From positions 124,001 to 188,000 of the IMG/VR virus record IMGVR_UViG_3300042261_002390: 64,000 nucleotides of DNA; one strand, given 5' to 3'. The notes beneath the pieces are model-generated. The model was not told where the DNA came from. It did not search any database and saw nothing but the letters and a program-made list of their open reading frames with translations. Numbering within the stretch: position 1 is the first letter of the stretch; each line of letters begins with the position of its first letter. Positions 5,228 to 35,806 of the stretch are shown here, one piece after another. A program made the translations under genes and the position numbers.

Positions 5228-5256
5228 AAAAGCGCAATAAGAATTGCGCTTTTTTT
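5228..5256 (+). terminator. Intrinsic terminator
   Basis: AAAAGCGCAAT-aaga-ATTGCGCT-TTTTTT hairpin plus U-tract. Confidence 0.85.
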
Positions 5257-5259
5257 ATC

Positions 5260-11950: not shown

Positions 11951-12101
11951 TAAAATTCAAAAAAAGAATATCAATAGAGATTTGAGAAAGTTTAAATACT
12001 TGACATCTATGGGATATACTATATTGTATCTATGGGAATATGATTTAAAACACAATTTAAATGAATGTAAAAATAAATTAAATAGACTGTTATATGAATA
12101 A
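11946..12101 (+). pseudogene. C-terminal relic of a Vsr/DUF559-like endonuclease
   Basis: Start-less frame FDKIQKKNINRDLRKFKYLTSMGYTILYLWEYDLKHNLNECKNKLNRLLYE*. The RD..K...L...GY.IL.LWE.D pattern is typical of Vsr-like nucleases. Not in the ORF track. Confidence 0.75.
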
Positions 12102-17388: not shown

Positions 17389-18771
17389 ATGGACGGAAAA
17401 ATTAGAATATTATTCTACAATCTTGATGGTGCAGGGGTTAATTATTTTAGAACATTAACACCAGCAATGGAACTTGAAAGAAATCACTCTGATGATTTTC
17501 ATGTGGAAATTAATCCTGAGTTAGATTTAAATGACCCAAATTTAATTGACTATTTAAAAACATTTCACATTATTCATTATCATCGTCAATTTTTACCTGA
17601 TACTCGAAAAATGTTGAATTTAGCTGACGAGTTAAAAAAAGCTGGTACAACATTGATTGTCGATATTGACGACTATTGGCATTTGCATAAAAAACATCCA
17701 TTTTATGATGTAAGTGTTGCAAATAAGTTATATTTACCAATTATTCAAAATCTTAAAATTGCTGATTATGTGACAACGACCTCGGAATTATTTGCTGAAG
17801 AAATTCGTAAAATTACGGGGAAAGATAATGTCATGGTTTATTATAATTCAATTGACCCAACATGGATGAAGCAATTTCAAAATAATTGGAAGCCAGACCC
17901 TGATGGTCGTGTAAGAATAACATATATGGCTGGTTCATCACATATGGGCGATATTGAACAACTTAAAGGCGTAGTCAATTATTTGAAAGCTGATTATCGT
18001 TTAAAAGATAAGTATAAGATTATTATCGCCGGATGGGATACTGAAGGTAATACTACTGACGTTAAATTTAATCAGGAATTTGGAGTTGAATTACAAAAAA
18101 GAGGTCTGTGGACAACAGATATAGTTAAGAGCATTAATAATTCAAGAGGTGATGTAGATGCTATTGTTAAATTACCTAACGATTTGAAGGAAAAATACAG
18201 GAATAAGGTTTTCGACGTGAAACAAAGAGATATTAAGTCTGAAGAAAGTGTTTATTATTTCTATGAGAAAATTTTAACTGATAATCATAAAATAATTGAT
18301 AATCCTGACTACTTACAATGGCTGATGAATTTCGAAAGAAATGTGAAATATGATGATGAGGGTAATTTTGGTAGACGTTGGACTCAAAAAGCAAACACAT
18401 ATGCTCAGGTTTTGGATGAAACTGATGTTGTTATTGCTCCTTTAGCTGATAACGAATTTAATAGAATGAAATCTAATTTGAAGCAAGTTGAATGTTGGAC
18501 AAGAAAACTCCCAATTATTTGTTCGGATATTCCACCATATAATGTTCATGGTAGACACATGGAAAATTGTGTATTAATCCCCGTAAAAAAAGACTCATAT
18601 AAAGATTGGCAGAAAAATTTGAAAAAACTTATTCTTGATGCTGATTTACGAAAGAAATTAGGCGAACAATTGTATGAGGATTTTAAAGAAGAATATAATT
18701 TAGCAAACGTTACAAAAAAACGTGCTGAATTTTATAAGTCAGTTGTGGCTAAAACATTAGAATTAGCATAA
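17389..18771 (+). CDS. Glycosyltransferase, GT-B fold (GT4-like)
   Basis: GVNYFR..P, VDIDDYW, ADYVTTTS, NSID, GSSH..D, IAPL..N.FN..KSNLK..E....LPIICSD. Confidence 0.85.
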   Translation: MDGKIRILFYNLDGAGVNYFRTLTPAMELERNHSDDFHVEINPELDLNDPNLIDYLKTFHIIHYHRQFLPDTRKMLNLADELKKAGTTLIVDIDDYWHLHKKHPFYDVSVANKLYLPIIQNLKIADYVTTTSELFAEEIRKITGKDNVMVYYNSIDPTWMKQFQNNWKPDPDGRVRITYMAGSSHMGDIEQLKGVVNYLKADYRLKDKYKIIIAGWDTEGNTTDVKFNQEFGVELQKRGLWTTDIVKSINNSRGDVDAIVKLPNDLKEKYRNKVFDVKQRDIKSEESVYYFYEKILTDNHKIIDNPDYLQWLMNFERNVKYDDEGNFGRRWTQKANTYAQVLDETDVVIAPLADNEFNRMKSNLKQVECWTRKLPIICSDIPPYNVHGRHMENCVLIPVKKDSYKDWQKNLKKLILDADLRKKLGEQLYEDFKEEYNLANVTKKRAEFYKSVVAKTLELA

Positions 18772-21199: not shown

Positions 21200-21231
21200 G
21201 TTTATTAGTATTTATAGTAAAATTTGTTATA

Positions 21232-21643: not shown

Positions 21644-23491
21644 ATGGCAGCAGAAACAACAAATATTATTAAGTACGGAAGTAGAACATTTGGTGAAATA
21701 CGTACTGATTTAATTTCATTTATCAGACAAACATATCCAACAATATTAAGTGATTTTACCGATTCTAGTATTGGGTCGATGTTGATTGACTTAAATGCTG
21801 GTGTTGGTAATAATCTTAGCGTTAATACTGATAGAGCATTTCAGGAAACACAACTAGAATATGCCCAACAAAGAGCATCAATATTAAATATTGCAAAAAA
21901 TATGGGATTCAATATCCCGGCAAAAAGACCATCAGTTACTGTTGTTGATTTTACTGTACTGATTCCTGTATTGGGTGATAAACCAGATGCATCATATTAT
22001 CCTGTTTTAGATGCAGGAGCACAAATTATCGGCGGTGGTAAAGTATTTGAAACACAAAATGTTATTGATTGGAGTTCTCCATATAGTAGCTTAGGTGACC
22101 CAAATCGCTCAATAATTCCAAATTTGGATTCGAATGGTGTGATTGTGAGCTATAATGTTACCAAGAGAGAAGTTGTTGTTAATGGCACGTCTAGTATATA
22201 TAAGACAATAATTACCAGTAATAATGTTGTTCCCTTTTTCAGCATAACATTACCTGACCCGGATGTTATTGAGATTGAAAGTATAATTCTTCTTGAAGGC
22301 ACGAATTATAACACTAACCCAACTGCTAGTGAATTTAATAATTCCGCTAACAGATATTATGAGGTGGATTACCTAGCGCAACAGAAAGTTTTCGTTGAAA
22401 ATACACAATCGTCACAATTAAATGTTCAAGCAAATGGCGTAAAGGCAGCTCAATGGATTGACGTTACAAAAAAATTCATAAAAGAATTTACTTCGAATGG
22501 TTATTGTAAAGTCACATTTGGTTCGGGGGATTCTGATATTGATGCATTTAAAAGTGGGTTTTTAAAAGAAGGTGTTAGTAATAAATATTTTCTCGAAAAT
22601 TTCTTAAATAATACAGCACTTGGTGAAAAATTGAAAGCAGGTTATACTTTATTTGTTAAATACCGTACTGGTGGTGGTTCAAGTTCAAATATTGGAGCAA
22701 GAGCATTAACTCAATTAGGTAATTATACACTTACTTCAAATGGTTCTCGTCAAGATTATCGACAAAATGTTGTAAGAAGTTTAAAAGTAAATAACCCAAT
22801 CCCGGCAATTGGTGGTAATGATGGTTTAAGTGTAGAACAAATAAGACAATTGATTAAATATAATTTTTCATCACAAATGAGAGATGTTACGTTAACTGAT
22901 TATTTGTTGCAAATATATAAAATGCCGGGTAAGTTTGGTTCGCCATTTAGAGCAAATGCATTAAAATTAGACAACAAGGTAATTATACCAATTTTAGATA
23001 TTGGTGCTGATGGAAAATTGTCAAATACTAGCAATAGTTTATTAAAAGAAAATATTGCAGAATATCTTAGTCAGTATAGAATGATTAATGACTATATTGA
23101 AATCAGAGATGGTAAAATATTTAATCTCGCATTTGATATTGATGTTTATGTTGAAAACATTGCCGATAATCAAATTGCTAATAGTATTATTACAATTGTA
23201 AGAAACTATTTGGATATCAATAATTATGAAATGAATGAGGACATATTTCTCGGAAGATTACAGAAAGAAATTTTAGCAGCAAACGGTGTTATTAACGTTA
23301 TTGAAATTAAGGTATATAATAAACAAGGCGGTAATTACTCCAACAATGTTGTATCACAGGATATTTTAAATACCTCAACAGGTCAAATTAAAATTATTAA
23401 TAACACAATTTATTCGACAGAAGATTCGATGTTTGAAATCAAATATCCTGAAAAGGATATTAGAGTTTTCTTACGTAAAAAGACTGTATAA
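21644..23491 (+). CDS. Baseplate wedge subunit, T4 gp6/baseplate J-like
   Basis: RTF.EIR..L, DF..SSIG.MLID, D....E..L..AQ.R.S..NIAK..G, VTFGSG, YRTGGG, AIGG.D, R.VTL.DY. Confidence 0.9.
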   Translation: MAAETTNIIKYGSRTFGEIRTDLISFIRQTYPTILSDFTDSSIGSMLIDLNAGVGNNLSVNTDRAFQETQLEYAQQRASILNIAKNMGFNIPAKRPSVTVVDFTVLIPVLGDKPDASYYPVLDAGAQIIGGGKVFETQNVIDWSSPYSSLGDPNRSIIPNLDSNGVIVSYNVTKREVVVNGTSSIYKTIITSNNVVPFFSITLPDPDVIEIESIILLEGTNYNTNPTASEFNNSANRYYEVDYLAQQKVFVENTQSSQLNVQANGVKAAQWIDVTKKFIKEFTSNGYCKVTFGSGDSDIDAFKSGFLKEGVSNKYFLENFLNNTALGEKLKAGYTLFVKYRTGGGSSSNIGARALTQLGNYTLTSNGSRQDYRQNVVRSLKVNNPIPAIGGNDGLSVEQIRQLIKYNFSSQMRDVTLTDYLLQIYKMPGKFGSPFRANALKLDNKVIIPILDIGADGKLSNTSNSLLKENIAEYLSQYRMINDYIEIRDGKIFNLAFDIDVYVENIADNQIANSIITIVRNYLDINNYEMNEDIFLGRLQKEILAANGVINVIEIKVYNKQGGNYSNNVVSQDILNTSTGQIKIINNTIYSTEDSMFEIKYPEKDIRVFLRKKTV

Positions 23492-24687
23492 TGGAAGTTA
23501 TAAAAAAAACTATATTACAAGCGTTAATTACAGGTACTACTATTGTGAGTGGTGTCACAAAATATGTTATCATACCTAATCCGGATGCTGTTTATCATAT
23601 GAAAATTGGATTGGACTCAAATTCTGAAGATATTGGTTTTTTTGATGTAATTACTGATTATGTGAGTGGTAGTACAACAACCACAACCAGTACAACAACC
23701 AGTACCAGTACAACTACCACAACTAGTACAACAACCAGTACCAGTACAACTACCACTAATTCACCTAGCTGTAATTTGAACATGACATTAAATATTGGTG
23801 ATGAAAATCTAAATTGGGGTGGTTATTTAGGTAATTACAATAGTAATTATGGTAATATAATTGTTAATTATGGGGATGGAAGTCCATTAGAAACTATAGA
23901 AGCATATGATGATGGAGGAACATGGTTCTATTACATAGAAAAGACTTATGGAAGTACTGGAATATATAATGTATCTATACAACTCCCTATTTGTGACTTA
24001 CCATTTATTAGTTTTGTTAATGCTAATATATCTCAACTAAATATAATAGATTTTCCTAATATTGAGCATTTCGAATTAGTAAATCAATTGGTAGAGTTAA
24101 ACATTCCTGATTTAAACAATTTTAAATCTTTAAAACACTTCTACTTAAATGGTGGTGTATATGAAACTACAGATTTTACAGTATTGCCTTTACTAGAAGA
24201 ATTAAGTATTGGAAGTTCGGATATTACTGGTTTAAATATTAATAATATGGGTTCTTTGTTAATGCTTAGTATAACACAATGTACTGGTATAGCGACTATA
24301 GATGTTGCTGGTTTATATAATCTTCTTGATATAGACATAGTAGATACGCCCATATCTATAAATAATCTTAATGAGTTGACATCAATAACAATTCTACGTT
24401 TAGAGAATGTTAATATGTCTAATATAGACTTAAGTGTAATTCCTTCTCTTGAAATATTCATAGTAGTGAATGGAACGTCTTTTACTGATGTTTTTGATTT
24501 TTCACAATCTCCAAATTTGTATCAAATAGCAATATCTAGTACATCTTTAACTGCGGGAGAAATTGAAACATCCATCTATTCTGTTTATGATAGAACATCA
24601 TTAACACAGGGAAGTGTGTCATTTGCAGAATTCCCATATACACCAACAATACTTAGTTATTTAGCATCCGTAAATTGGACAATATAA
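23491..24687 (+). CDS. Virion structural protein with Thr/Ser linker, PKD-like and LRR-like domains
   Basis: Baseplate operon. ~30-residue T/S tract, VNYGDGS...TYGSTGIYNVSI (PKD-like), repeated LxxLxxLxI units. Confidence 0.7.
   Translation: MEVIKKTILQALITGTTIVSGVTKYVIIPNPDAVYHMKIGLDSNSEDIGFFDVITDYVSGSTTTTTSTTTSTSTTTTTSTTTSTSTTTTNSPSCNLNMTLNIGDENLNWGGYLGNYNSNYGNIIVNYGDGSPLETIEAYDDGGTWFYYIEKTYGSTGIYNVSIQLPICDLPFISFVNANISQLNIIDFPNIEHFELVNQLVELNIPDLNNFKSLKHFYLNGGVYETTDFTVLPLLEELSIGSSDITGLNINNMGSLLMLSITQCTGIATIDVAGLYNLLDIDIVDTPISINNLNELTSITILRLENVNMSNIDLSVIPSLEIFIVVNGTSFTDVFDFSQSPNLYQIAISSTSLTAGEIETSIYSVYDRTSLTQGSVSFAEFPYTPTILSYLASVNWTI
23671..23757 (+). repeat. Thr/Ser-coding tandem repeat (36-nt unit duplicated at 23689-23724 and 23725-23757)
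   Basis: AGTACAACAACCAGTACCAGTACAACTACCAC(AACT) x2. Confidence 0.9.
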
Positions 24688-26076: not shown

Positions 26077-26109
26077 GAAAAATCCCGATGTAAAATATTG
26101 GGATTTTTC
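26077..26109 (+). terminator. Intrinsic terminator
   Basis: GAAAAATCCCGAT...ATTGGGATTTTTC. Confidence 0.7.
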
Positions 26110-26143
26110 ATTTTATAGGTATTTATAATAAAAATTTAAGCTT

Positions 26144-29100
26144 GTGGCAAAAGTTAAAGTTATAAATAACAATCTCGACCAAAATTTAAACGGGAACACA
26201 TTCACTAACGTACCATCTGAAACAATATTTTCATTTGGTAAATTTTCGATTACGTCTAATTTTGATGGACGAAAATATATCAATTATTCTGATACTTTAA
26301 GTTCATTCGTTCGTCCAGTAACATTGGAAAATATAGGCATTTCGGATGTTGAATCAGAAATTATCTATCAGTACAATACCAATGCAGTTTTAAATTTAGA
26401 CAAATCAGATTTAAACACTTTCATTAGATTTGGTTCGGCATATGAATTTTTAAGAGTATGTATTGAGAACATTATCCTTACATATCCCGGAAGTATTTTT
26501 ATGAATTCTCAATTGTCGAGAAATAATAATATAACGTATTTTGATTATATATATGACCCGGTAAGTAATTCATCAACATTTAAGATTCCGATGAATTGTG
26601 TTATGAATACATTTGGGTTGGTTTATAATTATGGGAATAATAGTATTCCAGACAATAACGAGCTTAAGAATCTAAATTTTTCGTATGAGAATTATGTGGT
26701 GTGGACATCAATGAATCCTGATGATAATACTAGTAATGTTATCGGTTTCACTGGAAATACCACAGGGAGAAACTATTTAACACTTACTGTTCATGGTAAT
26801 CCGTTTAGTATGATTACTACTGATTCAGCACCGCTTGATTTTCACATCAAGCCTAATAATTATGTTTTTGAAAAATTTAGGGCGGTCTTAAATGAATTTG
26901 AAAAATATATTGTTTCATCTAGAGTGGGTATGAATGGTTTTGAATTTGTTTTGAAAGACCCGACCTTGTTGGATGATGGTAACATTACATATTCGGATAT
27001 TAAATTATTGTGGAATACGTCAGACAAATATAATATTGACATAAACACACCTAACTATCAGAAATTTTTGGAAATTGTTTTAACTGTTGGGGTAAAATAC
27101 GATAAAATTAAAACAGACTTAATTGCAAGATTTTTAACTCCTTCGTCAATTAAGGCATATGACCTTACAGATGAGGGAAAAATGACTAAATTGCTTAGAA
27201 TTTACGGTAGAGAATTCGACCAAATTCGTGAATTTATTGATTCGTTGGTTTATATTAATAAGGTGACGTATGATAAAGTAAACAATGTCCCCGACCAAGT
27301 TGTAAGAAATTTATCAAGAACATTCGGATGGGATTATTTCTCATTGGTTAATGAAACTGAATTGATTGAAAGTTTTTTAACTGTTGATGAAAATGAGAGA
27401 GATTTGAATTCTGATTTATTGCCTGCTGAGATTGATATTGAATTGTGGAGAAGGATTATCATGAACACCAATTATTTTTGGAAAAGTAAAGGCACTAGAG
27501 AAGCCATTAAATCGATGTTTTTATTAATTGGTATTCCCGAGCCATTTATAAATATTACTGAATATGTGTATACTGTTGATGGAAAGATAAATCCAAATAC
27601 TGTACCGTTTTCAATAAATGATTTCCCAACACAATCATTACCATACGATACTGAAGGTTATCCTAAAGCACCAATCGAAGGTAATAATTATTATTTTCAA
27701 ATATCCGGGGATACTGATAACGGTCAAACATATTTTGACTTATTTAGAAAAGTTGGATTTAATTTGATGAGAACGCCAGATAATAAAAAATCTTGGGTTG
27801 AAAGTGGTGCAACTTATCGAATAGACGATTCAACGCCACAATATTATCAATTGGATAGTAAACTTGTCCTTAATACTAAGGAAGTTGATGTTGCTCTTGA
27901 TACTGCAAGAGGTATTGAGTATGATGTATATAACTATATTCAAAAGGATTATGCAATTAATTCTAGTGGATATACATTGCCATACTCATATGTAAATATA
28001 TCATTAGGCGTTAGTGGTTCACAAAACACATTTCCACTTCCATTAAATTATTCTTCTGAGAAGGTTATGGGCGACCTTGAAGTTCGTTTTAATGGTATAT
28101 TATTAAATGCTCCGAAAACAGGAACAACAACCGGAATCACATACCAAGCTGATTATAGTATTGACGAAGTTAGTAAGACATTTACCATCCTTAATGGAAT
28201 ATATGCTAAAAATAATACGTTGAGAAGGGATGTTATACAAGCTACATTTATTTATTCTGGTGGTACTCATTCACTTTCAGGATTATCAGTAAATTATGTT
28301 GTAACTAGGGTTAAGGCTGATGTAAATGGAACTGTAATACCATTGCCGACATATCCACGTGGTGATGTTCAAGTAACTATTAACGGTATTGCATTAACTA
28401 AAGGTACACCACAATTTATCGCAGATTATACACTCGACCCAAATAATTCAACAGGTAGTACAAATAATCAAATTATTATTCAAAATCCTGAAGTTATTGC
28501 ATATTTACAAATAAATCCCGAAATTCAAATTGCATATGTTGAGGTTGAAGGCAGTAATGATATTTATGCAAGAAGTGAAATTGTTAGAGTAGATAGTTTT
28601 AATTCAAGTAAAATATATTTGAATCAATCTGCAAATAAATATGTTTATAGATTGAATTATAAGGCAAATAATGCTTCTGACATTAAAGTGTTAATTGATG
28701 GGATTGCACTTGAACCAAATACCGATTATTCAATAAATGTACAAAATCTATATGAGGTTTTCTTACCAAGAGGTATAAAATACGGAAGTGTGATAAGCGT
28801 CTATTATCTTGTTGGTGCGAATGCGTTGTTTAACCCGGTGATATCTGATGTATTTGGTATTGGTGATATTAGCAATTTATCGTTTTTAGAATTTATTGAT
28901 TTGATTCAAAAAAGATTGGTTAATAGTAGAAATAGAAAAACAATTAGTGATTTTAAGGGTGGTTGGTATCCTACTTTATTGAGAGTATATACCGAATACT
29001 TGAAACGTGCAACATTGCCGGAAGATAATCCATTGCATTCAAATGGTTACACATTTGCTAATTTATATCCATTCTTAAGTAAATATAATGCATTTTTCCA

Positions 29101-30826
29101 AAGATTTGTTGACCAATTGTTATCAGCAACAATTATCTTACGAAGGGGTGGATTAATGGTCAGAAACAGCGTATTTACTAAACAAAAATTTATGTATAGA
29201 AGAGGCGTTAATTTATATGCCAATAATTCAACAACTACTGACAAAAGAGGAAACCCAATGTATGAATATCTTGGCGATGATGATGTGATTTTTAAAATTG
29301 TACAAGATATATTACCTCCTGAACCACCTAATCCACCAACATTATATGTCGATACTATTACAGGTGGTATTGGTAGTATTATTACTGGTGGTGAGAATAT
29401 TTTAGGTATTGAAGTAATTAATAAATATGGCGTTGATTATAGAAAGTGGAACGGTAGCTCTTGGGATACTTGGGTTCGAATAAGCGAATCAGGAACGCTA
29501 ATTTCTGATAGCTATTCAACAACAATATCTGATGTAACCCCAGATACTATGTATGAGTATCGAGCATTTGTTCAATCACCATATACTGGATACACTGGTC
29601 AATCAAAAACAATTACAACACCAGTAGTAGTACCAGACCCGGAAATATTTACAAAGAATGCTTCGGTAACTCAAACAACATTAGCTAGTGGTGGTGAAAA
29701 TATTGTTCGATATGCTGATGCTGATTATTATGGTATGCAATATAGAGTGCTTTACACAAGTACTTGGACTACAGTTCCAGCACCGTTATTGTCCACACCA
29801 TTGGTTACTAATAATTATGATTATCTTATAACTGGTTTGTCGCCGGAAACAGCATATGAATATCGTGCATATATGACCGTTGATGGCGTTCCATATTATG
29901 GTAATACTAAAACGACAGTAACGTCAGCAATTGCACCGACAATACCAACAGTAATTACTGGTGGTGCTCACGATGTGACTGATATTTGTATGCAAATTGG
30001 CGATAATTACGTTAGTGATAAGGGAAATGCTTGCATCACTGAATATGGCGTATTATACACTCAAAATCCCGCATATAGCTGTGCGTCATGTTTGGTCTAT
30101 GGTAATACACCTACATATGTGTGCAAAAAATCAATATCAAGTGATATTGGGGTGGGAACATGTTATTTCCCCGATGGTGTTCAATCAATTATTAATTTAG
30201 ACCCAAACACTCAAACATATTATAGAGCATATGCCACAAATAGTGTGGGCGTTGGATATGGATGTGTTAATTCTCAAGCTACATGCGTGTCATCAACAGT
30301 TCATACAGTATATTTAAGTGACGGTAATTACAATTCGTGTTCGATTTCAGCAGTTAATTCGTGTGCTAAAATTGTTATTGAGCCACCATTAACCCCGGGA
30401 CAAAGTTTTACATTATCTTACAGTAATAATGCATGCTCGACTACAGATACTGTAACTAGATTAATGTCAACATGCTCTTTTGTTTGTTGTGGTATTAATA
30501 AATTAGATTGTGCCAGTACAAATATCCCAGATAATTATAGTGCTTGTTCGTGTGATGTATCTGATAATAAGGTAGGAACAATAAATATCGACTATGCTAC
30601 TAATTTAAGTGATATTACATTTTATACGATAGCAAATAGTCACACATCGAACGCTTGTTTAGATTATAATAATTGTGCATCGACATGCATTACATCAATA
30701 AGCAATCCTGTTAATGGTACATTCCAAATTTCAGGAGATTTAAACAATCAATATATGTGCATTTATACCGCCAGTAATTTCACCGGAAATGAAAGTGGTG
30801 GTTTTGTACCATTTGAGATTGCATGA
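26144..30826 (+). CDS. Large baseplate/tail protein with FN3-like repeats and Cys-rich C-terminus
   Basis: IWRR-like ELWRRI..N..YFWKSKGTREAI (wedge/P2 gpI-like motif), three FN3-like units (TPDTMYEYRAF, LSPETAYEYRAY, LDPNTQTYYRAYATNSVG). GTG start after GTATTTATA. Confidence 0.8.
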   Translation: MAKVKVINNNLDQNLNGNTFTNVPSETIFSFGKFSITSNFDGRKYINYSDTLSSFVRPVTLENIGISDVESEIIYQYNTNAVLNLDKSDLNTFIRFGSAYEFLRVCIENIILTYPGSIFMNSQLSRNNNITYFDYIYDPVSNSSTFKIPMNCVMNTFGLVYNYGNNSIPDNNELKNLNFSYENYVVWTSMNPDDNTSNVIGFTGNTTGRNYLTLTVHGNPFSMITTDSAPLDFHIKPNNYVFEKFRAVLNEFEKYIVSSRVGMNGFEFVLKDPTLLDDGNITYSDIKLLWNTSDKYNIDINTPNYQKFLEIVLTVGVKYDKIKTDLIARFLTPSSIKAYDLTDEGKMTKLLRIYGREFDQIREFIDSLVYINKVTYDKVNNVPDQVVRNLSRTFGWDYFSLVNETELIESFLTVDENERDLNSDLLPAEIDIELWRRIIMNTNYFWKSKGTREAIKSMFLLIGIPEPFINITEYVYTVDGKINPNTVPFSINDFPTQSLPYDTEGYPKAPIEGNNYYFQISGDTDNGQTYFDLFRKVGFNLMRTPDNKKSWVESGATYRIDDSTPQYYQLDSKLVLNTKEVDVALDTARGIEYDVYNYIQKDYAINSSGYTLPYSYVNISLGVSGSQNTFPLPLNYSSEKVMGDLEVRFNGILLNAPKTGTTTGITYQADYSIDEVSKTFTILNGIYAKNNTLRRDVIQATFIYSGGTHSLSGLSVNYVVTRVKADVNGTVIPLPTYPRGDVQVTINGIALTKGTPQFIADYTLDPNNSTGSTNNQIIIQNPEVIAYLQINPEIQIAYVEVEGSNDIYARSEIVRVDSFNSSKIYLNQSANKYVYRLNYKANNASDIKVLIDGIALEPNTDYSINVQNLYEVFLPRGIKYGSVISVYYLVGANALFNPVISDVFGIGDISNLSFLEFIDLIQKRLVNSRNRKTISDFKGGWYPTLLRVYTEYLKRATLPEDNPLHSNGYTFANLYPFLSKYNAFFQRFVDQLLSATIILRRGGLMVRNSVFTKQKFMYRRGVNLYANNSTTTDKRGNPMYEYLGDDDVIFKIVQDILPPEPPNPPTLYVDTITGGIGSIITGGENILGIEVINKYGVDYRKWNGSSWDTWVRISESGTLISDSYSTTISDVTPDTMYEYRAFVQSPYTGYTGQSKTITTPVVVPDPEIFTKNASVTQTTLASGGENIVRYADADYYGMQYRVLYTSTWTTVPAPLLSTPLVTNNYDYLITGLSPETAYEYRAYMTVDGVPYYGNTKTTVTSAIAPTIPTVITGGAHDVTDICMQIGDNYVSDKGNACITEYGVLYTQNPAYSCASCLVYGNTPTYVCKKSISSDIGVGTCYFPDGVQSIINLDPNTQTYYRAYATNSVGVGYGCVNSQATCVSSTVHTVYLSDGNYNSCSISAVNSCAKIVIEPPLTPGQSFTLSYSNNACSTTDTVTRLMSTCSFVCCGINKLDCASTNIPDNYSACSCDVSDNKVGTINIDYATNLSDITFYTIANSHTSNACLDYNNCASTCITSISNPVNGTFQISGDLNNQYMCIYTASNFTGNESGGFVPFEIA

Positions 30827-30865
30827 TTTATAAAATAAATTGTATTTATAGTAAAATAATATAAA

Positions 30866-32665
30866 ATGGCATTTATTGAAAAAGAAAACCCTGTTGTGTT
30901 GAATATAATGTTAACTTCTAAGGGTAGAGAACAATTATCTACTGGAAATTTAACATTCAGTTATTTTGCTATTGGTGATAGTGAAATGGATTATAATTTT
31001 ATTCGAGAAGTTAATGCTGACCCAAATGTTGACCCTAAATACGTGTCGTTTGATTCTAGCATATTAAGACCAAAAGATAAGAATCCTAAAATCATTTCAT
31101 TTGTGCCAAGAAATTTGAGTGGTGACCCATATAATGAGATAGCAACAATATCGCCCATATCATATGATGTGGTAAATACAGCAAACCCAATTGGATTTTT
31201 TAGTGGAAATACTTTTATAATCGATGCATTACATGTTAAGCAGCCGGACATGATGATATACATGAGTGGTGCTACAGGTGGAACATCGTTATCAATACGA
31301 AAAGCACCTACTTTCGGTGCTAGTGGGAATGAACCAGCAATAAATGATTTATTGTTTGTGAAATGGAGTGCTGATGTCGATACTACCGGGCACACAATTA
31401 ATGATAATCTACCAACACCATATTTGATGTATCAAATTGTTGATAAAACGGGTACTTTGGCTGCAAATACATTAAAGGTTATTGTTGATAGAGAACTGCC
31501 TGATTTTAGTGCGTTTTCTCCTTCAAATGTTTCTGGGGCATTGTTATATTATAGTGGTTTAACATCACCTCATCAAATGTCACCCGATTATTTAACAGAA
31601 AGTGTTTTAGATTTTTTTAATAACTACCAATGTACAATTGATGCATATCCTTTTTGGAATATGACAATGGTGTATACTGAAGAATTAGCTGGGATACAAG
31701 CTGCCGATAGAAAATATACTCAATTTAATAGTAGGACATATGGTGGGTTTGTATCATACATTCAAAATCAATCACCAGTATATAAAAAATTGGGTATCAT
31801 ACACTATACAAATAATTCTCCGGCGAATACGTATGGTGAAGAATTTTATTTAAATACACCAACCATAACTATCCCAACAATTATGTGGCATAAAGCAAGT
31901 ACAACTAAATTAGGTGTTAGTTTTAGTGCGATTGGGAATGTTAAATTATTAACTGGCGATACTGTATCATTAAACATTGAATATTATGATTTGGGTGATA
32001 CTGATGGTAATATTATTGGTAAAGTATTCCCGGGACTTAAAATATTTGTCATTGAAGACCAAGAATTGTTGTTTGCTATGTCGTATAAGTCAAATAGGTC
32101 TTGGACACTACCAAATTATTTAGTGGGTGGTGGTAGTGGTATTATTCCTTGCCCAACTACAAGTACAACAACTACAACAACTACGGCAGGTCCTGTTATC
32201 CCGACAACTACTACAACTAGTACAACTACTACAAGCACAACTAGTACAAGTACAACTTCTACTAGTACAAGCACAACTAGTACAACTTCTACAAGTACTA
32301 GTACGACCTCTACAAGTACAACAACAACATTACCACCCGTAAAAACATTGGATGTTGTTAGCGTTGGAACACCTGATACTACATTAGATTATGGTATTAC
32401 ATTATCAAATACTACTGGCTCACCGATAACATTTAGATTACAAATATCGAATGAAACGCAAGCTGCTGGTGTATTCCATAATAGTGGTCAAATTATTGTA
32501 CCTGCTGGTACAGTTAATCAATATTATAGTGGTACGATTACTGGTTTCCCATTCTCTAATGCAAATGGCGATACAATTGATGCTAATTTGAGTGATGATG
32601 ATGGTGTGACATGGACTGCTTCATTTAATTTTGACCCACCATATACTTTGCCATATGGTGCATAA
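30866..32665 (+). CDS. Tail/baseplate protein with tail-collar-like N-terminus and long mucin-like Thr/Ser tract
   Basis: MLTSKGREQL...YFAIGDSE N-terminus, ~55-residue T/S tract, small beta-rich terminal domain. Confidence 0.75.
   Translation: MAFIEKENPVVLNIMLTSKGREQLSTGNLTFSYFAIGDSEMDYNFIREVNADPNVDPKYVSFDSSILRPKDKNPKIISFVPRNLSGDPYNEIATISPISYDVVNTANPIGFFSGNTFIIDALHVKQPDMMIYMSGATGGTSLSIRKAPTFGASGNEPAINDLLFVKWSADVDTTGHTINDNLPTPYLMYQIVDKTGTLAANTLKVIVDRELPDFSAFSPSNVSGALLYYSGLTSPHQMSPDYLTESVLDFFNNYQCTIDAYPFWNMTMVYTEELAGIQAADRKYTQFNSRTYGGFVSYIQNQSPVYKKLGIIHYTNNSPANTYGEEFYLNTPTITIPTIMWHKASTTKLGVSFSAIGNVKLLTGDTVSLNIEYYDLGDTDGNIIGKVFPGLKIFVIEDQELLFAMSYKSNRSWTLPNYLVGGGSGIIPCPTTSTTTTTTTAGPVIPTTTTTSTTTTSTTSTSTTSTSTSTTSTTSTSTSTTSTSTTTTLPPVKTLDVVSVGTPDTTLDYGITLSNTTGSPITFRLQISNETQAAGVFHNSGQIIVPAGTVNQYYSGTITGFPFSNANGDTIDANLSDDDGVTWTASFNFDPPYTLPYGA
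32155..32329 (+). repeat. Low-complexity Thr/Ser-coding repeat
   Basis: Repeated ACTAGTACAA(C/G) units encoding TTSTTTTTTT...TTTTTSTTTTSTTSTSTTSTSTSTTSTTSTSTSTTSTSTTT. Confidence 0.9.
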
Positions 32666-32705: not shown

Positions 32706-33707
32706 ATGAAAGAATTAAGATTTGTAAGTGCTCAACCTGCTACGGACTATTATGCGTGGCAGGTTGAAGTAATGATTAATAATTTCCTTGAAATGGGAAT
32801 TAATGGAAATTATATCGATATAATTTGTATGATAAATAATAACGTGATTCCCGAAAAATGGTCGAAATTAGCTAATCATTATAATTTTGTTCGTTTCTTT
32901 TTTTATAATGATACTAGAAAATTAAAATTCTATCCATCTTCAACAAGACCAAATGCATTAAAACAACATTGGTTAACAAGACCAGAATTATTAGAGAATC
33001 ATATATTTTATCATGATTGTGATATTGTATTTACTAAGCCAATAGATTGGTCTAAGTTTTTGGATGACGATAATAAATGGTATGGGTCTGATACTCGTTG
33101 GTATATTTCTCATGATTATATCATATCAAAAGGTGAGGATATATTGGATAAAATGTGTGGAATTGTTGATATTGACAAGCAAATTGTAAAAGATAACGAA
33201 TTAAATAGTATTGGCGCACAATATTTAATGAAAGATATTGATTGGCAATTTTGGGATAGGGTTGAGCGTGATTCAGAACGATTATTTAAAGAAATTACCG
33301 ACATTAACAATTACAAAATATTCCTAGATAATCAAAGAATTGCTGATGAAAAAGCTAAAGGCATTAATGGATTACCACCATATCATCCATTACAAATATG
33401 GTGTGCTGACATGTGGGCAGTATTATGGAATGGATGGAAAATGGGTAAAGAAACGATTTGTAGTGAAGAATTACAATTTGCATGGGCAACGTCAGGTGAG
33501 GATGATTGGCATAAATTCAATATTTTTCATAATGCAGGAGTCACTGAAGAAATAAAAGCTACTGCGGAAAAGGAAGGATTATTTTATAAAGCAGATTATA
33601 TGAATAAACTACCATATAATGAAGAATTAAAAATTAAACCCCGCACTACAAGTTTAAAGTATTGGGAAATAATTAAGAAAACCGCAAAAAAATCAGTTTT
33701 ATTGTAA
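32706..33707 (+). CDS. GT-A glycosyltransferase resembling plant peptidyl-serine galactosyltransferase (SERGT1, GT96)/HPAT (GT95)
   Basis: Ordered motifs DYYAWQ, YPSSTRPNAL..HW, IFYHDCDIVF.KP (DxD), WCADMWA. Confidence 0.65.
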   Translation: MKELRFVSAQPATDYYAWQVEVMINNFLEMGINGNYIDIICMINNNVIPEKWSKLANHYNFVRFFFYNDTRKLKFYPSSTRPNALKQHWLTRPELLENHIFYHDCDIVFTKPIDWSKFLDDDNKWYGSDTRWYISHDYIISKGEDILDKMCGIVDIDKQIVKDNELNSIGAQYLMKDIDWQFWDRVERDSERLFKEITDINNYKIFLDNQRIADEKAKGINGLPPYHPLQIWCADMWAVLWNGWKMGKETICSEELQFAWATSGEDDWHKFNIFHNAGVTEEIKATAEKEGLFYKADYMNKLPYNEELKIKPRTTSLKYWEIIKKTAKKSVLL

Positions 33708-33708
33708 T

Positions 33709-34362
33709 ATGGAAAGAATAATACACCAAATTTGGGTTGGTTCTTATGAAATGCCCGAGAGAGAAAAATATTTTATGAAAAGGGTTAAAGAATTAAACCC
33801 TACATTTCAACATATGTTGTGGAATGATAATAATTTACCAAACCTACCTGATAAAATTAAAACACTTTGTGATGCGTTTAGAAAACAAAAAGATTATGCT
33901 CATATTGCTGATGTTTTGAGAATATTCCTCGTTAAAGAGTATGGTGGATTGTATATTGATGTGGATTTTAAACCGATGAAACCATTTACATTGTTTGATA
34001 ACAACAATAACTCAATGTTTGTATGTTATCATGGTGGTAATGATTATACTATGCCTAATGGTGTATTCGGTGGCAAAAAAAATTCAGAACAAGTAAATTT
34101 TATATATGAGTTAGTTGATATTGGAAAAAGTGGATGGTATGGACCTAGTTGGCTGGGTGGTGCAGTAAAACAATATTTAAAACTAGATTATGAAACAAAT
34201 CATGATATAGTTAAAATAAAATGTGCTGAAAACAATATCGATTACTGTTTATTTCCTGAGTTTGAGACATATTTCAAGCATTTAGCATTATATTCTTGGT
34301 CACCGGAAAATAAGAGAAATTTTGAAAATGGAAATATAAATTATTTAGAATGGACGAGATAG
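33709..34362 (+). CDS. Glycosyltransferase family 32 (Och1-like, DxD)
   Basis: RIIHQIWVG, LWND, YAHIADVLR, EYGGLYIDVD. Confidence 0.9.
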   Translation: MERIIHQIWVGSYEMPEREKYFMKRVKELNPTFQHMLWNDNNLPNLPDKIKTLCDAFRKQKDYAHIADVLRIFLVKEYGGLYIDVDFKPMKPFTLFDNNNNSMFVCYHGGNDYTMPNGVFGGKKNSEQVNFIYELVDIGKSGWYGPSWLGGAVKQYLKLDYETNHDIVKIKCAENNIDYCLFPEFETYFKHLALYSWSPENKRNFENGNINYLEWTR

Positions 34363-34970
34363 AAAAGATATTTTCTGGTGATAATCATTTATATGGTAGA
34401 ACCGATATTGATAATTTTAGCGTATCTGGATGTGGGTCTCAAATGGATGACTCCACATTAAACGTTAGAAATAATTTATATCAATTTTTAAATAAACATG
34501 GGATTAATAGTATTGCTGATATACCGTGTGGTGATTACTGGTGGATGAGGCATGTTAAATTATTTGAGATTGAATATATTGGTGGTGATATAATAACACC
34601 ACAAATTCAAAAAATGAAAAAAAACTTTCCATACGTTGATTTTAGAAGAATTGATATTCGATTAGACAAACTACCAACTGTCGATTTATTATTTTGTCGA
34701 GATTGTTTATTTCATTTTAGCTCAGTTGATAAGAAAATGGCATTACATAATTTTATAAATTCAGACATCAAATACATTCTAATGAGTAATCACCCTCTTT
34801 CAAATAAAAATAACGACATTGTTACGGGTGATTTTACACATATTAACTGGCGACTAGAACCGTGGAATTTTGGATTACCGATTGATATATTATATGATAG
34901 TAATGTAGGATATGATACTAAAGAATTACAACTTTACACAAAAAATCAAATTATTGAATTTTTATTATGA
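34350..34970 (+). CDS. Class I SAM-dependent methyltransferase
   Basis: SGCGS, SIADIPCGD..W, YIGGDI, DLLFCRDCLFHF. Confidence 0.88.
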   Translation: MDEIEKIFSGDNHLYGRTDIDNFSVSGCGSQMDDSTLNVRNNLYQFLNKHGINSIADIPCGDYWWMRHVKLFEIEYIGGDIITPQIQKMKKNFPYVDFRRIDIRLDKLPTVDLLFCRDCLFHFSSVDKKMALHNFINSDIKYILMSNHPLSNKNNDIVTGDFTHINWRLEPWNFGLPIDILYDSNVGYDTKELQLYTKNQIIEFLL

Positions 34971-35773
34971 ATAAAAGAGTTAGTTTTGTTTGTACAACAT
35001 ATAGAAGGTTTAGATGTGTTGAAAGAATTTTATTGCAATGCCGGGCACAAACATATCAAAATAAAGAATTGATTATCTTTAACACTGATGTTGAATATCC
35101 AATTACAATTGGATTTGATGATGTAAATATTGTGATTGTTAATAATAATACTGATTATCAAACCGGGAAACCTTATGAAAATAGAGGTCAAATTTGTCGT
35201 GATGCTGTAACACATGCAACAGGTGATTATTTCATGCTTGCAGATGATGATGATATTTATTTGCCTTGGCATCTTCAACAAGCTGTTGAGGGGATTGAAG
35301 AATTAGGTACTGATGCATGGAAACCGCAAAAGAGCTTATTCGCTACAAAGGAAAAGATTGAGTTATGCCAGAATACATTAGAAGCGAGTGTGATTGTTAA
35401 AATGCCTAGAATCAGGCAAATTGGGTTTAGAAGTGATATTACCGGATATGAGGGGTTAAGCTGGTATACTAAATTAAGAGATGAAGGTCAGTTGAATGAA
35501 AACAATTTGAATTATGTCCCATCATATTGTTTTAATTGGAGCGACCCACATGAACTTGCAGGACATAAGCAAAGCGGTGATATTAACAACCCCAATAATT
35601 TTGAAAACCATAAAAATGCCTCAAAGGATGTTGCTACGAAACCGTTGGAAATTAAATGCTTATGTGAATTAAATAATGTGTATGATAAATATTATGACTG
35701 GTTACAATCGAACTCAAATATTTTGAACACCGATTACTATGAAAGATATGTGAGGCAATTTATAACTAATTAA
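34967..35773 (+). CDS. Glycosyltransferase family 2
   Basis: VSFVCTTYRR, QTYQNKELII, ATGDYFMLADDDDIYLPWHL. Confidence 0.9.
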   Translation: MNKRVSFVCTTYRRFRCVERILLQCRAQTYQNKELIIFNTDVEYPITIGFDDVNIVIVNNNTDYQTGKPYENRGQICRDAVTHATGDYFMLADDDDIYLPWHLQQAVEGIEELGTDAWKPQKSLFATKEKIELCQNTLEASVIVKMPRIRQIGFRSDITGYEGLSWYTKLRDEGQLNENNLNYVPSYCFNWSDPHELAGHKQSGDINNPNNFENHKNASKDVATKPLEIKCLCELNNVYDKYYDWLQSNSNILNTDYYERYVRQFITN

Positions 35774-35806
35774 AATTATCAGTATTTATAGTAAATTTGA
35801 TTAACA

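What the first reader, a model, noticed from the sequence alone, without database searches (positions are those of the whole stretch)
32706..33707. Phage glycosyltransferase resembling plant SERGT1/HPAT protein O-glycosyltransferases
Four motifs appear in the same order as I recall for plant peptidyl-serine alpha-galactosyltransferase (GT96) and Hyp-O-arabinosyltransferase (GT95). They are YYAWQ (~YFDWQ), YPSSTRPNAL..HW (~YPAINKP....WL), YHDCDIVF.KP (~LDADMI...P) and WCADMWA (~WISEMYG). Those enzymes attach the first sugar to hydroxy-amino acids in repetitive proteins, which fits the neighbouring T/S tracts. The resemblance is from memory, not a search.
Basis: inference. Interest (0 to 1): 0.8.

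Follow-up and report, generated by a model that had tools for sequence, protein, structure and literature searches.

The report
Phage glycosyltransferase paired with poly-threonine proteins
This jumbo-phage gene encodes a soluble sugar-transferring enzyme, a distant relative of the plant enzymes that put the first sugar on cell-wall proteins, and across hundreds of unrelated phages its gene sits right after a virion protein carrying a poly-threonine tract, which suggests a widespread and so far undescribed way for phages to sugar-coat their particles.

Summary
It models confidently (pLDDT 96.8) as a GT-A glycosyltransferase with invariant DxD, His and Lys. It belongs to a large phage family (PHROG 4417, function unknown, no Pfam match). 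Pfam's HPAT (GT95) model does not hit it directly. A bridge set of 28 viral domains, 18 of them Pfam-HPAT matches, aligns to the family at 96.5% hhalign probability (E 8e-10, 232 columns) with all motifs in register; reversed sequences and ten other GT domains score nothing. The functional inference is supported by comparative genomics. In 50/77 relatives of the window gene and 67/79 Firmicute-phage relatives, the gene immediately upstream encodes a poly-Thr/Ser tract, against 2/656 and 11/919 at other positions. The carriers fall into at least 13 unrelated protein clusters. Among homologous major tail proteins, the poly-Thr tail is present only where the enzyme gene is. In the window, the enzyme follows a 599-aa tract protein and precedes GT32-like, methyltransferase and GT2-like genes. 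Best reading: it starts O-glycosylation of Thr/Ser tracts on virion proteins. No biochemistry exists; about 30% of close relatives lack a nearby tract.

The parts
32706..33707 (+). HPAT-like GT-A glycosyltransferase (333 aa), member of PHROG 4417; proposed initiating peptidyl-Thr/Ser O-glycosyltransferase
   Evidence: ORF. PHROG 4417 match at E 4.7e-59. AF2 model pLDDT 96.8. GT-A retaining-type structural neighbours. hhalign to a Pfam-HPAT-matching set at E 8e-10. No hydrophobic segment.
32748..32762 (+). Motif YYAWQ (aa 15-19), start of the first helix after strand 1; W18 nearly invariant
   Evidence: Aligns to Y-Q-x-W-Q (invariant Y13, Q14, W16, Q17) of the HPAT-like set.
32931..32972 (+). 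Motif YPSSTRPNALKQHW (aa 76-89); Y76 invariant
   Evidence: Aligns to the G-G-I-P-N-K-Y-E-x-x-K-W-L block of the HPAT-like set.
33015..33023 (+). DxD motif (D104-C-D106) at the end of strand 99-103; predicted divalent-metal and NDP-sugar binding site
   Evidence: D106 invariant and D104 at least 90% conserved. Both invariant in the Firmicute branch. Aligns to the invariant D106-P-D108 of the HPAT-like set.
33399..33419 (+). Motif WCADMWA (aa 232-238); M236 invariant, W232 and W237 nearly invariant
   Evidence: Aligns to W-x-S-E-M (invariant W173 and M177) of the HPAT-like set.
33522..33590 (+). Block IFHNAGV...LFYK (aa 273-295) with invariant H275, G278 and K295; probable third metal ligand plus donor-phosphate contact, by analogy with the H-x-x-G...K block of GT8 enzymes (own knowledge)
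   Evidence: Aligns to I-I-H-Y-P-N...I-F-F-K of the HPAT-like set (nearly invariant H216 and K232).
30866..32665 (+). 599-aa phage protein with a mucin-like Thr/Ser tract between an N-terminal part of about 430 aa and a C-terminal domain of about 110 aa; proposed acceptor substrate
   Evidence: No Pfam or PHROG match. No BLAST homolog in the 79 related loci. Lies in the tail/baseplate gene block.
32150..32335 (+). Thr/Ser tracts of the 599-aa protein (aa 429-442 and 445-490)
   Evidence: 38 Thr and 14 Ser in 60 residues.
33709..34362 (+). GT32-type DXD glycosyltransferase (217 aa); proposed glycan-elongating enzyme
   Evidence: Pfam Gly_transf_sug E 1.9e-13. Starts 1 nt after the upstream stop. 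The same domain follows the HPAT-like domain in the fusion protein P0124.
34350..34970 (+). SAM-dependent methyltransferase (206 aa); proposed sugar O-methylation
   Evidence: phrog_3382 methyltransferase E 4.8e-34. Weak Pfam Methyltransf_25 match. Overlaps the upstream gene by 13 nt.
34967..35773 (+). GT2-type glycosyltransferase (268 aa); proposed glycan-elongating enzyme
   Evidence: Pfam Glycos_transf_2 E 2.9e-7. Overlaps the upstream gene by 4 nt. A GT2 domain is the last domain of the fusion protein P0124.
23491..24687 (+). Second Thr/Ser-tract protein (398 aa; tract aa 58-93, nt 23662-23769), next to a baseplate-wedge homolog; possible second substrate
   Evidence: The neighbouring gene 21644-23491 matches phrog_219, baseplate wedge subunit.
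30842..30855 (+). Copy of the intergenic motif GTATTTATAGTAAA, 10 nt upstream of the tract-protein gene; possible promoter of the substrate-plus-enzymes unit
   Evidence: 16 copies against 3.5 expected by chance. The next copy downstream is at 35782.
35782..35795 (+). Next copy of the same intergenic motif, just after the GT2-like gene; marks the end of the proposed unit

Best explanation
The gene encodes a soluble cytoplasmic GT-A glycosyltransferase. By analogy with its structural neighbours and with the chemistry of GT95/GT96, it is probably metal-dependent and retaining. It is a remote homolog of the plant HPAT (GT95) and SGT1 (GT96) peptide O-glycosyltransferases. During infection it would use a nucleotide sugar to attach the first sugar to threonine or serine hydroxyls in the poly-Thr/Ser tract of the virion protein encoded just upstream (30866-32665), and possibly also of the second tract protein (23491-24687). 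The three genes packed behind it (GT32-like, methyltransferase, GT2-like) would then extend and methylate the glycan. The result would be a mucin-like, sugar-coated linker on a tail or baseplate protein. SHOWN: the fold; the conserved DxD, His and Lys; homology to Pfam-HPAT-matching domains; the tight and repeated linkage of this gene family to poly-Thr-bearing virion proteins. INFERRED: the acceptor, the initiating role, the donor sugar, the stereochemistry and the biological purpose (protease or antibody shielding, stiffening of a spacer, or adhesion).
For: Enzyme identity. The AF2 model has pLDDT 96.8. The closest solved structures are all retaining GT-A enzymes: WbbM, the UGGT catalytic domain, glycogenin, LgtC and Skp1 alpha-galactosyltransferase (E 1e-6 to 1e-4). 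D104xD106, H275 and K295 are conserved across 52 and 121 homologs. There is no membrane segment.

HPAT homology. hhalign of A1 against A5 gives 96.5% probability and E 8.2e-10 over 232 columns. 18 of the 28 A5 members match PF23452 and nothing else. Controls are negative. Atlas TM is 0.70 to HPAT clusters.

Acceptor. A gene with at least 12 S/T in 15 aa occupies position -1 in 50/77, -2 in 16/70 and -3 in 2/62 loci of the window branch, against 2/656 elsewhere. In the Firmicute branch it occupies position -1 in 67/79 loci, against 11/919 outside positions -1 to -3. In named phages the gene directly follows a poly-Thr-tailed major tail or tube protein (phiFL1A, phiCTP1, SA2), or Thr-rich small or structural proteins (LpeD, LP65), and the upstream protein in Chryseobacterium phage MA9V-3 also has a tract. 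The carriers fall into at least 13 BLAST-unrelated clusters. Among homologs of the phiFL1A tail protein, the poly-Thr tail is present in the 2 phages with the enzyme and absent in the 10 without it.

Initiating role. phiFL1A has poly-Thr tails on both capsid and tail proteins and no other recognisable glycosyltransferase.

Cassette. The genes abut or overlap. The fusion protein P0124 has this domain, then GT32, then GT2, in the same order as the window genes. Other fusions are to GT6, GT7C, GT25, GT29 and GT1 domains. A fusion to radical-SAM/SPASM (P0127) also sits behind two poly-Thr genes.
Against: There is no biochemical or mass-spectrometric evidence for any family member. 24 of the 80 window-branch loci, including a conserved syntenic group (L012, L014, L020-L025, L029, L032), have no tract within 6 kb. 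The two-domain relative P0150 also lacks one. The family may therefore have other acceptors, or its substrates may be encoded elsewhere. Loci are phylogenetically related, so the Fisher P values overstate independence. Pfam HPAT does not match the family directly. Structural searches do not separate HPAT-like from GT8-like neighbours. The 599-aa carrier is not shown to be a virion component; its model is poor.
Confidence: 0.7

Rival explanations
1. The enzyme glycosylates a host cell-envelope polymer (teichoic acid, O-antigen, capsule or cell-wall polysaccharide), as serotype-converting prophage glycosyltransferases do. Its position in the structural module would then be incidental.
For: The closest solved folds include sugar- or lipid-acceptor enzymes (WbbM, LgtC). 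Fusion partners are ordinary polysaccharide-type GT domains. About 30% of close relatives have no tract nearby. Many Firmicute members are in prophages.
Against: This does not explain why the gene sits immediately after a poly-Thr-bearing structural protein in at least 13 unrelated carrier clusters, nor why homologous tail proteins carry the tail only where the gene is present. The family also occurs in phages of Herelleviridae (LpeD, LP65) and in a 246-kb jumbo phage. The enzyme is soluble, with no membrane segment.
Confidence: 0.1
2. The enzyme glycosylates phage DNA (hypermodified bases) to evade restriction.
For: Phage GT-A and GT-B enzymes that glycosylate hydroxymethylated bases are well known (reviewed in PMC12619734). 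The window also encodes nucleotide-metabolism genes elsewhere.
Against: No hydroxymethylase or base-modification gene is adjacent. The gene is embedded among structural genes in every phage examined. Small temperate siphophages such as phiFL1A show no base-hypermodification pathway among their annotated or scanned proteins. This reading does not explain the tract linkage.
Confidence: 0.04
3. The protein does act on the poly-Thr/Ser tract, but it is not the initiating enzyme, or it transfers something other than a simple sugar (for example a sugar-phosphate). In the window, one of the other three cassette enzymes or a host enzyme would start the chain.
For: The window cassette has two further GTs. 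Donor and product were not testable. A relative sits next to an APS kinase, which hints at further glycan chemistry.
Against: This is the only GT that travels with the tract across phage groups, and the only recognisable GT in phiFL1A. Its homologs HPAT and SGT1 are themselves the chain-initiating enzymes on peptide hydroxyls (PMC8012813).
Confidence: 0.12
4. The family is a non-catalytic assembly factor or chaperone for tract-bearing structural proteins that has merely kept a GT-A fold.
For: In siphophages the slot between the tail tube and tape-measure genes usually holds assembly chaperones.
Against: The DxD, His and Lys positions are invariant or nearly so across hundreds of sequences at 30-85% identity, and they match the invariant positions of the HPAT-like set. 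A separate tail assembly chaperone follows the gene in phiFL1A (gp52 matches Phage_TAC_12).
Confidence: 0.03

Closest known systems
Plant hydroxyproline O-arabinosyltransferases HPAT1-3 (CAZy GT95; Pfam PF23452) and peptidyl-serine alpha-galactosyltransferase SGT1/SERGT1 (GT96)
   Same: Remote homology through a bridge of Pfam-HPAT-matching viral domains: 96.5% hhalign probability, with the WQ, DxD, W...M, H and K motifs in register. Predicted structures agree at TM about 0.70. The proposed chemistry is the same in kind: the first sugar goes onto a hydroxy-amino acid within a repetitive, low-complexity protein tract (role of HPAT and SGT1 from PMC8012813).
   Different: The Pfam HPAT model does not match the family directly (best E 0.23). 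There is no N-terminal membrane anchor; the plant enzymes are Golgi type II membrane proteins (PMC8012813), whereas this one is soluble. The acceptor would be Thr (and Ser) rather than Hyp or Ser-Hyp4. The donor is unknown. The context is viral and cytoplasmic.
Mycobacteriophage virion glycosylation (Che8 gp108-110, Corndog gp38, Myrna; Freeman et al. 2023, as cited in PMC12363180 and PMC12619734)
   Same: Phage-encoded glycosyltransferases modify the C-termini of capsid and tail-tube subunits. The Firmicute relatives of the window gene sit next to capsid-size and tail-tube-size proteins with C-terminal poly-Thr tails. Both cassettes combine GTs with a methyltransferase.
   Different: The enzyme families differ: Che8 gp108 is GT2 plus a methyltransferase, gp109 is GT2-like and gp110 is GT25-like. 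hhalign finds no relation to the window family (P 0.17-0.69). No Mycobacterium phage is among the 77 phage records carrying the family. In Che8 the GT genes lie at the far right end of the genome, not beside the substrate genes.
GT8-clan retaining GT-A enzymes (glycogenin, LgtC, XXYLT1), the UGGT catalytic domain (GT24), WbbM and Skp1 alpha-galactosyltransferase AgtA (GT77)
   Same: These are the best solved-structure matches (E 1e-6 to 1e-4). All use a DxD plus a C-terminal His for the metal. Glycogenin, UGGT and AgtA act on proteins or protein-linked glycans (own knowledge).
   Different: TM scores are only 0.43-0.49, with 7-12% identity. No family member matches Pfam Glyco_transf_8. The Atlas gives a lower TM (0.58) than for HPAT clusters (0.70).
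Cytoplasmic O-glycosylation of serine-rich repeat adhesins in streptococci and staphylococci by GtfA/GtfB followed by GT-A extenders (own knowledge, not tested here)
   Same: The logic is the same: a soluble initiating enzyme decorates a long Ser/Thr-rich repeat in the cytoplasm, and neighbouring GTs extend the glycan.
   Different: GtfA is a GT-B (GT4) enzyme and unrelated in fold. The substrates are exported bacterial adhesins rather than virion proteins.

Membership tests
Pfam PF23452 HPAT / CAZy GT95 | Significant match to the family profile (Pfam gathering score 23.9 bits) | tested here: not met
   The window protein has no hit at E <= 1. Of 52 + 83 + 121 family members scanned, the only HPAT hit reported is E 0.23 among the 52 of A1.
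Pfam PF23452 HPAT / CAZy GT95 | Homology detectable by profile-profile comparison to sequences that do match the family | tested here: met
   hhalign of A1 against A5 gives 96.5% probability, E 8.2e-10, 232 columns. 18/28 A5 members match PF23452, best E 4.6e-9. Reversed controls give P 0.2-0.5. Other GT domains give P of at least 0.04.
Pfam PF23452 HPAT / CAZy GT95 | GT-A-like fold with a conserved DxD | tested here: met
   AF2 model with GT-A neighbours. D104xD106 aligns to the invariant DPD of the HPAT-like set. GT95 is predicted to be GT-A-like (PMC8476585).
CAZy GT95 / GT96 | Golgi type II membrane protein with an N-terminal anchor (PMC8012813) | tested here: not met
   The maximum 19-residue Kyte-Doolittle mean is 0.76, so there is no hydrophobic segment.
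CAZy GT95 / GT96 | Acceptor is peptidyl hydroxyproline (GT95) or peptidyl serine of extensin repeats (GT96); donor is UDP-L-arabinofuranose or UDP-galactose | not testable with these tools
   Only genomic linkage to poly-Thr/Ser tracts is available. Donor and product need biochemistry.
CAZy GT96 (SGT1/SERGT1) | Sequence similarity to SGT1 itself | not tested
   No SGT1 sequence could be obtained with the tools. The link rests on the literature statement that GT95 and GT96 are related (PMC8012813).
PHROG 4417 (unknown function) | Full-length match to the family profile | tested here: met
   E 4.7e-59; residues 5-326 match profile positions 2-291 of 293.
CAZy GT8 | Match to Pfam Glyco_transf_8 and a close structural match | tested here: not met
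   No PF01501 hit in any scan. Solved GT8 structures match only at TM 0.38-0.49.
Phage virion O-glycosylation systems (mycobacteriophage type) | A phage-encoded GT plus a virion protein shown to carry glycans | tested here: inconclusive
   The GT and the candidate substrates are present and genetically coupled. Glycans on any of these virions were not shown, and the enzymes are not homologous to those of Che8.

The most novel reading that the evidence does not exclude
PHROG 4417 would be the catalytic half of a two-part module: a peptidyl-threonine O-glycosyltransferase plus a portable poly-Thr 'glyco-tag' appended to capsid, tail-tube, fibre or decoration proteins. Phages of Enterococcus, Staphylococcus, Lactobacillus, Clostridium and Bacteroidota, and aquatic jumbo phages, would use it to coat their virions with sugars. 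The enzyme would be a soluble viral sister lineage of the plant extensin-glycosylating GT95/GT96 families, so this kind of peptide O-glycosyltransferase would be far older and more widespread than its plant-only description suggests. It would also mean that many candidate therapeutic phages of Gram-positive pathogens are glycosylated in a way that current annotation does not show.
Probability: 0.55. Interest if true: 0.85.

Novelty: new variant of a known kind. Interest (0 to 1): 0.72.

Why it matters
Virion glycosylation by phage-encoded enzymes is so far documented for mycobacteriophages, where it shields particles from antibodies (Freeman 2023, as cited in PMC12363180). The evidence here points to a second, unrelated and much more widespread system. 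Its enzyme family has thousands of members, all labelled hypothetical. It would make a specific prediction testable at once: the poly-Thr tails on capsid and tail proteins of cultured Enterococcus, Staphylococcus, Lactobacillus and Clostridium phages are O-glycosylated by the adjacent gene. That bears on phage immunogenicity and stability in therapy, on interpreting unexplained densities in cryo-EM maps, and on glyco-engineering, because a short genetically encoded tag plus one soluble enzyme could be useful. It would also give the plant GT95/GT96 families their first soluble, easily expressed relatives for structural work, since those families lacked a crystal structure in 2021 (PMC8476585).

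Tried and rejected
- Direct family assignment failed. Pfam gives no hit for the window protein or for 256 relatives. PDB sequence searches with the protein and with its profile gave only chance TAL-effector and MinE hits.
- Searching with the divergent Enterococcus phage 9183 homolog, in the hope of reaching Pfam-labelled relatives, returned 206 unlabelled Firmicute phage and prophage proteins.
- hhalign against a single HPAT-like sequence or a 7-sequence profile was only suggestive (P 7e-4 to 8e-5). A deeper 28-sequence profile was needed.
- The reciprocal Foldseek search with the HPAT-like domain model put a family member at rank 3, but GT8-like proteins scored alike, so it does not discriminate.
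- Near-identical DNA search in named phages found nothing.
- The 599-aa carrier could not be identified: no Pfam or PHROG match, no BLAST homolog in related loci, and a poor Atlas model.
- Promoter and terminator consensus scans were no better than shuffles.
- Neighbours in the tract-less syntenic group gave nothing useful in PDB sequence searches.
- Ten literature searches found no description of this family or of poly-Thr tail glycosylation. The Freeman 2023 paper itself is not held.
- The DNA-modification, envelope-modification and chaperone readings were considered and ranked low (see the rival explanations).
Full report
**1. Observation**

The four motifs are present in order: YYAWQ at residues 15-19, YPSSTRPNALKQHW at 76-89, YHDCDIVFTKP at 102-112 and WCADMWA at 232-238. 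They coincide with the invariant or nearly invariant columns of an alignment of 52 diverse homologs (W18, Y76, Y102, D104, D106, Q230, W232, M236, W237). That alignment also reveals a fifth block, FHNAGV...LFYK, with invariant H275, G278 and K295. The neighbouring T/S tract is real. The 599-aa ORF just upstream (30866..32665) has 38 Thr and 14 Ser in 60 residues at aa 429-490. A second tract protein lies at 23491..24687, beside a baseplate-wedge homolog.

**2. Setting**

The window comes from a 246-kb IMG/VR viral contig, so this is a jumbo phage. It is about 30% G+C and has no close relative among named phages. The gene lies in a + strand block of tail and baseplate-type genes. It is followed, with a gap of 1 nt and then overlaps of 13 and 4 nt, by three more genes:
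- a GT32-type DXD glycosyltransferase (33709-34362; Pfam Gly_transf_sug E 1.9e-13);
- a methyltransferase (34350-34970; phrog_3382 E 4.8e-34);
- a GT2-type glycosyltransferase (34967-35773; Pfam E 2.9e-7).

None of the four enzymes has a hydrophobic segment. A conserved intergenic motif, GTATTTATA(G/A)TAAA, occurs 16 times against 3.5 expected (0 of 100 shuffles reach 16). It precedes many + strand genes. Copies at 30842 and 35782 bracket exactly the tract-protein gene plus the four enzyme genes, with none in between. This fits one transcription unit, although the motif's function is only inferred.

**3. What the protein is**

No Pfam family matches it, even at E <= 1, and no PDB sequence does. 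It matches PHROG 4417, function unknown, end to end (E 4.7e-59). It has 2,573 homologs in the 90% cluster database. All are labelled hypothetical, and the 120 listed carry no Pfam domain. There are 833 representatives at 50% clustering.

AlphaFold2 with the 52-sequence alignment gives pLDDT 96.8 and pTM 0.93. Foldseek against the PDB returns only GT-A enzymes of the retaining type: WbbM, the UGGT catalytic domain, glycogenin, LgtC, XXYLT1, Skp1 alpha-galactosyltransferase, GT6 and XXT1. Scores are E 1e-6 to 1e-4, but TM is only 0.43-0.49. The DxD follows strand 99-103, the canonical GT-A position. I conclude that it is an active DxD-type GT-A glycosyltransferase. The retaining mechanism is an inference from its neighbours.

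**4. The HPAT/SGT1 question**

The ESM Atlas gave the first lead. 22 of the 100 nearest clusters have at least 10% of members with a PF23452 (HPAT) hit. Structural TM is 0.69-0.70 to four HPAT-domain clusters (green algae, and bacterial PqqD-HPAT fusions), against 0.58 to plant GT8.

Direct HMMER tests were negative. Of 256 family members scanned against Pfam, the only HPAT hit reported was E 0.23.

It found viral multidomain proteins of 915-1207 aa. Their N-terminal 250 residues match PF23452 above the gathering score (28.4 bits against 23.9; E 1.3e-6) and are followed by PF10250 (protein O-fucosyltransferase family) and PF11397 (GlcNAc transferase) domains. Relatives from viral and metagenome contigs gave 28 non-redundant domains (A5). 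18 of them match PF23452 (best E 4.6e-9), and none matches any other family.

hhalign of the window's family (A1) against A5 gives 96.5% probability and E 8.2e-10 over 232 columns, spanning residues 4-301 of the window protein. A combined A1+A3 profile gives 97.1% and 5.6e-11. All five motifs align in register:

| Window family | HPAT-like set (A5) |
|---|---|
| W18-Q19 | W16-Q17 |
| Y76 ... R81-P82 block | I-P-N-K-Y block |
| D104-x-D106 | D106-x-D108 |
| W232 ... M236 | W173 ... M177 |
| H275 | H216 |
| K295 | K232 |

Controls:
- Reversed A5 gives P 0.2-0.5.
- Ten other GT domains give P 0.04-0.7 (the window's GT32-like, GT2-like and third GT; Che8 gp108-110; GT6, GT7C, GT32 and GT2 domains of fusion proteins).
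- Three mutually divergent HPAT-like single sequences give P 1e-5 to 1e-3.

A reciprocal Foldseek search with a model of the HPAT-like domain (pLDDT 91.6) ranks a family member third of 802 (TM 0.57), but GT8-like viral proteins score similarly. Structure alone therefore does not separate the two.

Verdict: the window family is a remote homolog of the HPAT superfamily. The literature describes GT95 as related to GT96/SGT1 (PMC8012813). The family is not a member of GT95 or GT96 as currently defined, and it lacks their membrane anchor. No plant sequence was compared directly.

**5. What it acts on**

Named phages gave the clue:

| Phage | Position of the homolog | Thr-rich protein nearby |
|---|---|---|
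| Enterococcus phiFL1A | directly after major tail protein gp50 | gp50 ends in a 27-residue Thr/Ser tail |
| Clostridium phiCTP1 | directly after the tail tube protein | tube protein ends in two Thr runs |
| Staphylococcus SA2 | after the major tail protein | tail protein ends in T8 and is overlapped by an ORF encoding a long Thr tract |
| Enterococcus 9183 | directly after the major head protein | the major tail protein, five genes downstream, has a Thr-rich C-terminus |
| Lactobacillus LpeD | after a 135-aa protein | that protein is 53% Ser/Thr |
| Lactobacillus LP65 | after two small genes | an MS-confirmed structural protein and a small protein, both ending in Thr-rich repeats |
| Chryseobacterium MA9V-3 | after a 429-aa protein | that protein has an internal T/S tract |

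Systematically, in 79 IMG/VR loci of the window branch, an ORF with at least 12 S/T in 15 residues occupies position -1 in 50/77, -2 in 16/70 and -3 in 2/62, against 2/656 at all other positions. In 80 loci of the Firmicute branch, which is the same family (hhalign E 9e-94), it occupies position -1 in 67/79, against 11/919 outside positions -1 to -3. There the tract is always at the extreme C-terminus of capsid-size or tail-tube-size proteins, and some loci have two tailed proteins. The Fisher P values (1e-43 and 4e-39) overstate independence, because the loci are related.

After masking the tract, the carriers fall into at least 13 BLAST-unrelated clusters. The window's own 599-aa carrier has no BLAST homolog in the other loci. 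So the tract is what is conserved, not the carrier protein.

A presence/absence test points the same way. Homologs of the phiFL1A tail protein occur in 76 phage records. The two sampled phages that have the enzyme (phiFL1A, R3.3) end in poly-Thr. The ten sampled phages without it in the locus end shortly after the shared core with no poly-Thr, and the capsid proteins behave likewise. These ten are five Streptococcus phages, SPP1, SplendidRed, cIP1, phiJL-1 and ATCC8014. Streptococcus, Bacillus and Pediococcus phages contribute none of the 77 records with the enzyme.

phiFL1A has no other recognisable glycosyltransferase among its annotated or scanned proteins. If its tails are glycosylated by the phage, this enzyme must attach the first sugar.

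Domain fusions support a multi-step glycan pathway that starts with this domain:
- P0124 is this domain, then GT32, then GT2, in the same order as the window's genes.
- Other fusion partners are GT6, GT7C, GT25, GT29, GT1 and methyltransferase domains.
- A radical-SAM/SPASM fusion (P0127) sits behind two poly-Thr genes.

**6. Limits**

- No member of the family has been assayed.
- 24 of the 80 window-branch loci lack a tract within 6 kb, among them a syntenic group; three of the 24 are cut off at the upstream end. The two-domain relative P0150 also lacks one.
- The 599-aa carrier is unidentified.
- Donor sugar, linkage and biological role are inferred.

**7. Comparison and novelty**

In function, the closest described system is mycobacteriophage virion glycosylation (Che8, Corndog, Myrna; Freeman 2023, as cited in PMC12363180 and PMC12619734). 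There, capsid and tail-tube C-termini are glycosylated by phage GTs, but those are GT2- and GT25-type enzymes unrelated to this family. In ancestry, the closest families are GT95 and GT96. Ten full-text searches found no description of this family, of PF23452 in phages, or of glycosylated poly-Thr tails. Papers outside the held library cannot be excluded. I rate it a new variant of a known kind: phage virion O-glycosylation carried out by a different, HPAT-related enzyme family coupled to a portable poly-Thr tract.

**8. Verdict**

My confidence by claim:
- active GT-A glycosyltransferase: about 0.95;
- remote homolog of the HPAT superfamily: about 0.85;
- it initiates O-glycosylation of the adjacent Thr/Ser tracts: about 0.7.

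Noticed in passing
window 1577-61290 (16 sites, e.g. 21208-21221, 26119-26132, 30842-30855, 35782-35795): The intergenic motif GTATTTATA(G/A)TAAA occurs 16 times with up to 2 mismatches, against 3.5 expected (0 of 100 shuffles reach 16). 14 copies are on the + strand, and many lie about 10-35 nt upstream of a start codon. It is probably a phage promoter or other expression signal.
   Followed up: partly
window 26077-26109 (+): A strong 15-bp hairpin followed by a T-rich run sits just before the motif copy at 26119 and the 1560-aa gene at 26144. It looks like a terminator-promoter junction.
   Followed up: no
window 23491-24687 (+), tract nt 23662-23769: A second protein with a Thr/Ser tract (22 T and 10 S in 36 residues, near its N-terminus) lies directly after a baseplate-wedge homolog (21644-23491). 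It may be a second substrate of the same enzyme.
   Followed up: partly
window 17389-18771 (+): A further glycosyltransferase (460 aa; phrog_7162, E 1.5e-34) lies 14 kb upstream of the cassette. It is also preceded by a copy of the intergenic motif (17342).
   Followed up: no
window 5244-6545 (+) and 12094-13719 (+): A transposase gene (phrog_506, E 4.8e-118) and a tRNA nucleotidyltransferase (CCA-adding enzyme family; phrog_2244, E 2.7e-56) are present in the phage genome. No tRNA genes were found in the window.
   Followed up: no
window 26144-30826 (+): A 1560-aa protein lies directly upstream of the tract protein. Its C-terminal third is Cys-rich and repeat-like. It is probably a fibre or other distal tail component and carries no Thr/Ser tract.
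   Followed up: no
L005:4667-4930 (Staphylococcus phage VB-SauS-SA2): An annotated 88-aa ORF overlaps the 3' end of the major tail protein gene in another frame and encodes a long poly-Thr tract. It looks like a frameshift extension of the tail protein, which would give two tail-protein forms with short and long Thr tails.
   Followed up: no
L170-L173, L176-L229 (IMG/VR contigs, some labelled GVMAG): Viral giant multidomain proteins (915-1286 aa) combine a Pfam-HPAT domain with a protein-O-fucosyltransferase-family domain (PF10250) and one or two PF11397 GlcNAc-transferase domains, all in one polypeptide. About 5 of 63 distinct loci have (S/T)P-repeat proteins two or three genes upstream.
   Followed up: partly
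L295:656-5144 (ENA metagenome scaffold): A fusion of the family domain with a radical-SAM/SPASM domain (P0127) is preceded by two poly-Thr proteins and followed by an APS kinase. This hints at further modification of the glycan or the tract, such as sulfation.
   Followed up: no
L012, L014, L020-L025, L029, L032 (IMG/VR): A conserved syntenic group of close homologs (about 60-62% identity) has no Ser/Thr tract within 6 kb. Its neighbours are unknown proteins of 336, 77 and 120-206 aa upstream and 175-230 and 292 aa downstream, one of which has weak similarity to a rhamnose-binding lectin. The acceptor in these phages is unexplained.
   Followed up: partly
L006:5001-5870 (Enterococcus phage 9183 gp095): The record's annotators noted homology to a Streptococcus protein named 'PqqD family peptide modification chaperone'. 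The Atlas lists bacterial PqqD + HPAT-domain proteins (382 aa, Pseudomonadota). A fusion to a peptide-binding PqqD-like domain would fit a peptide acceptor.
   Followed up: no
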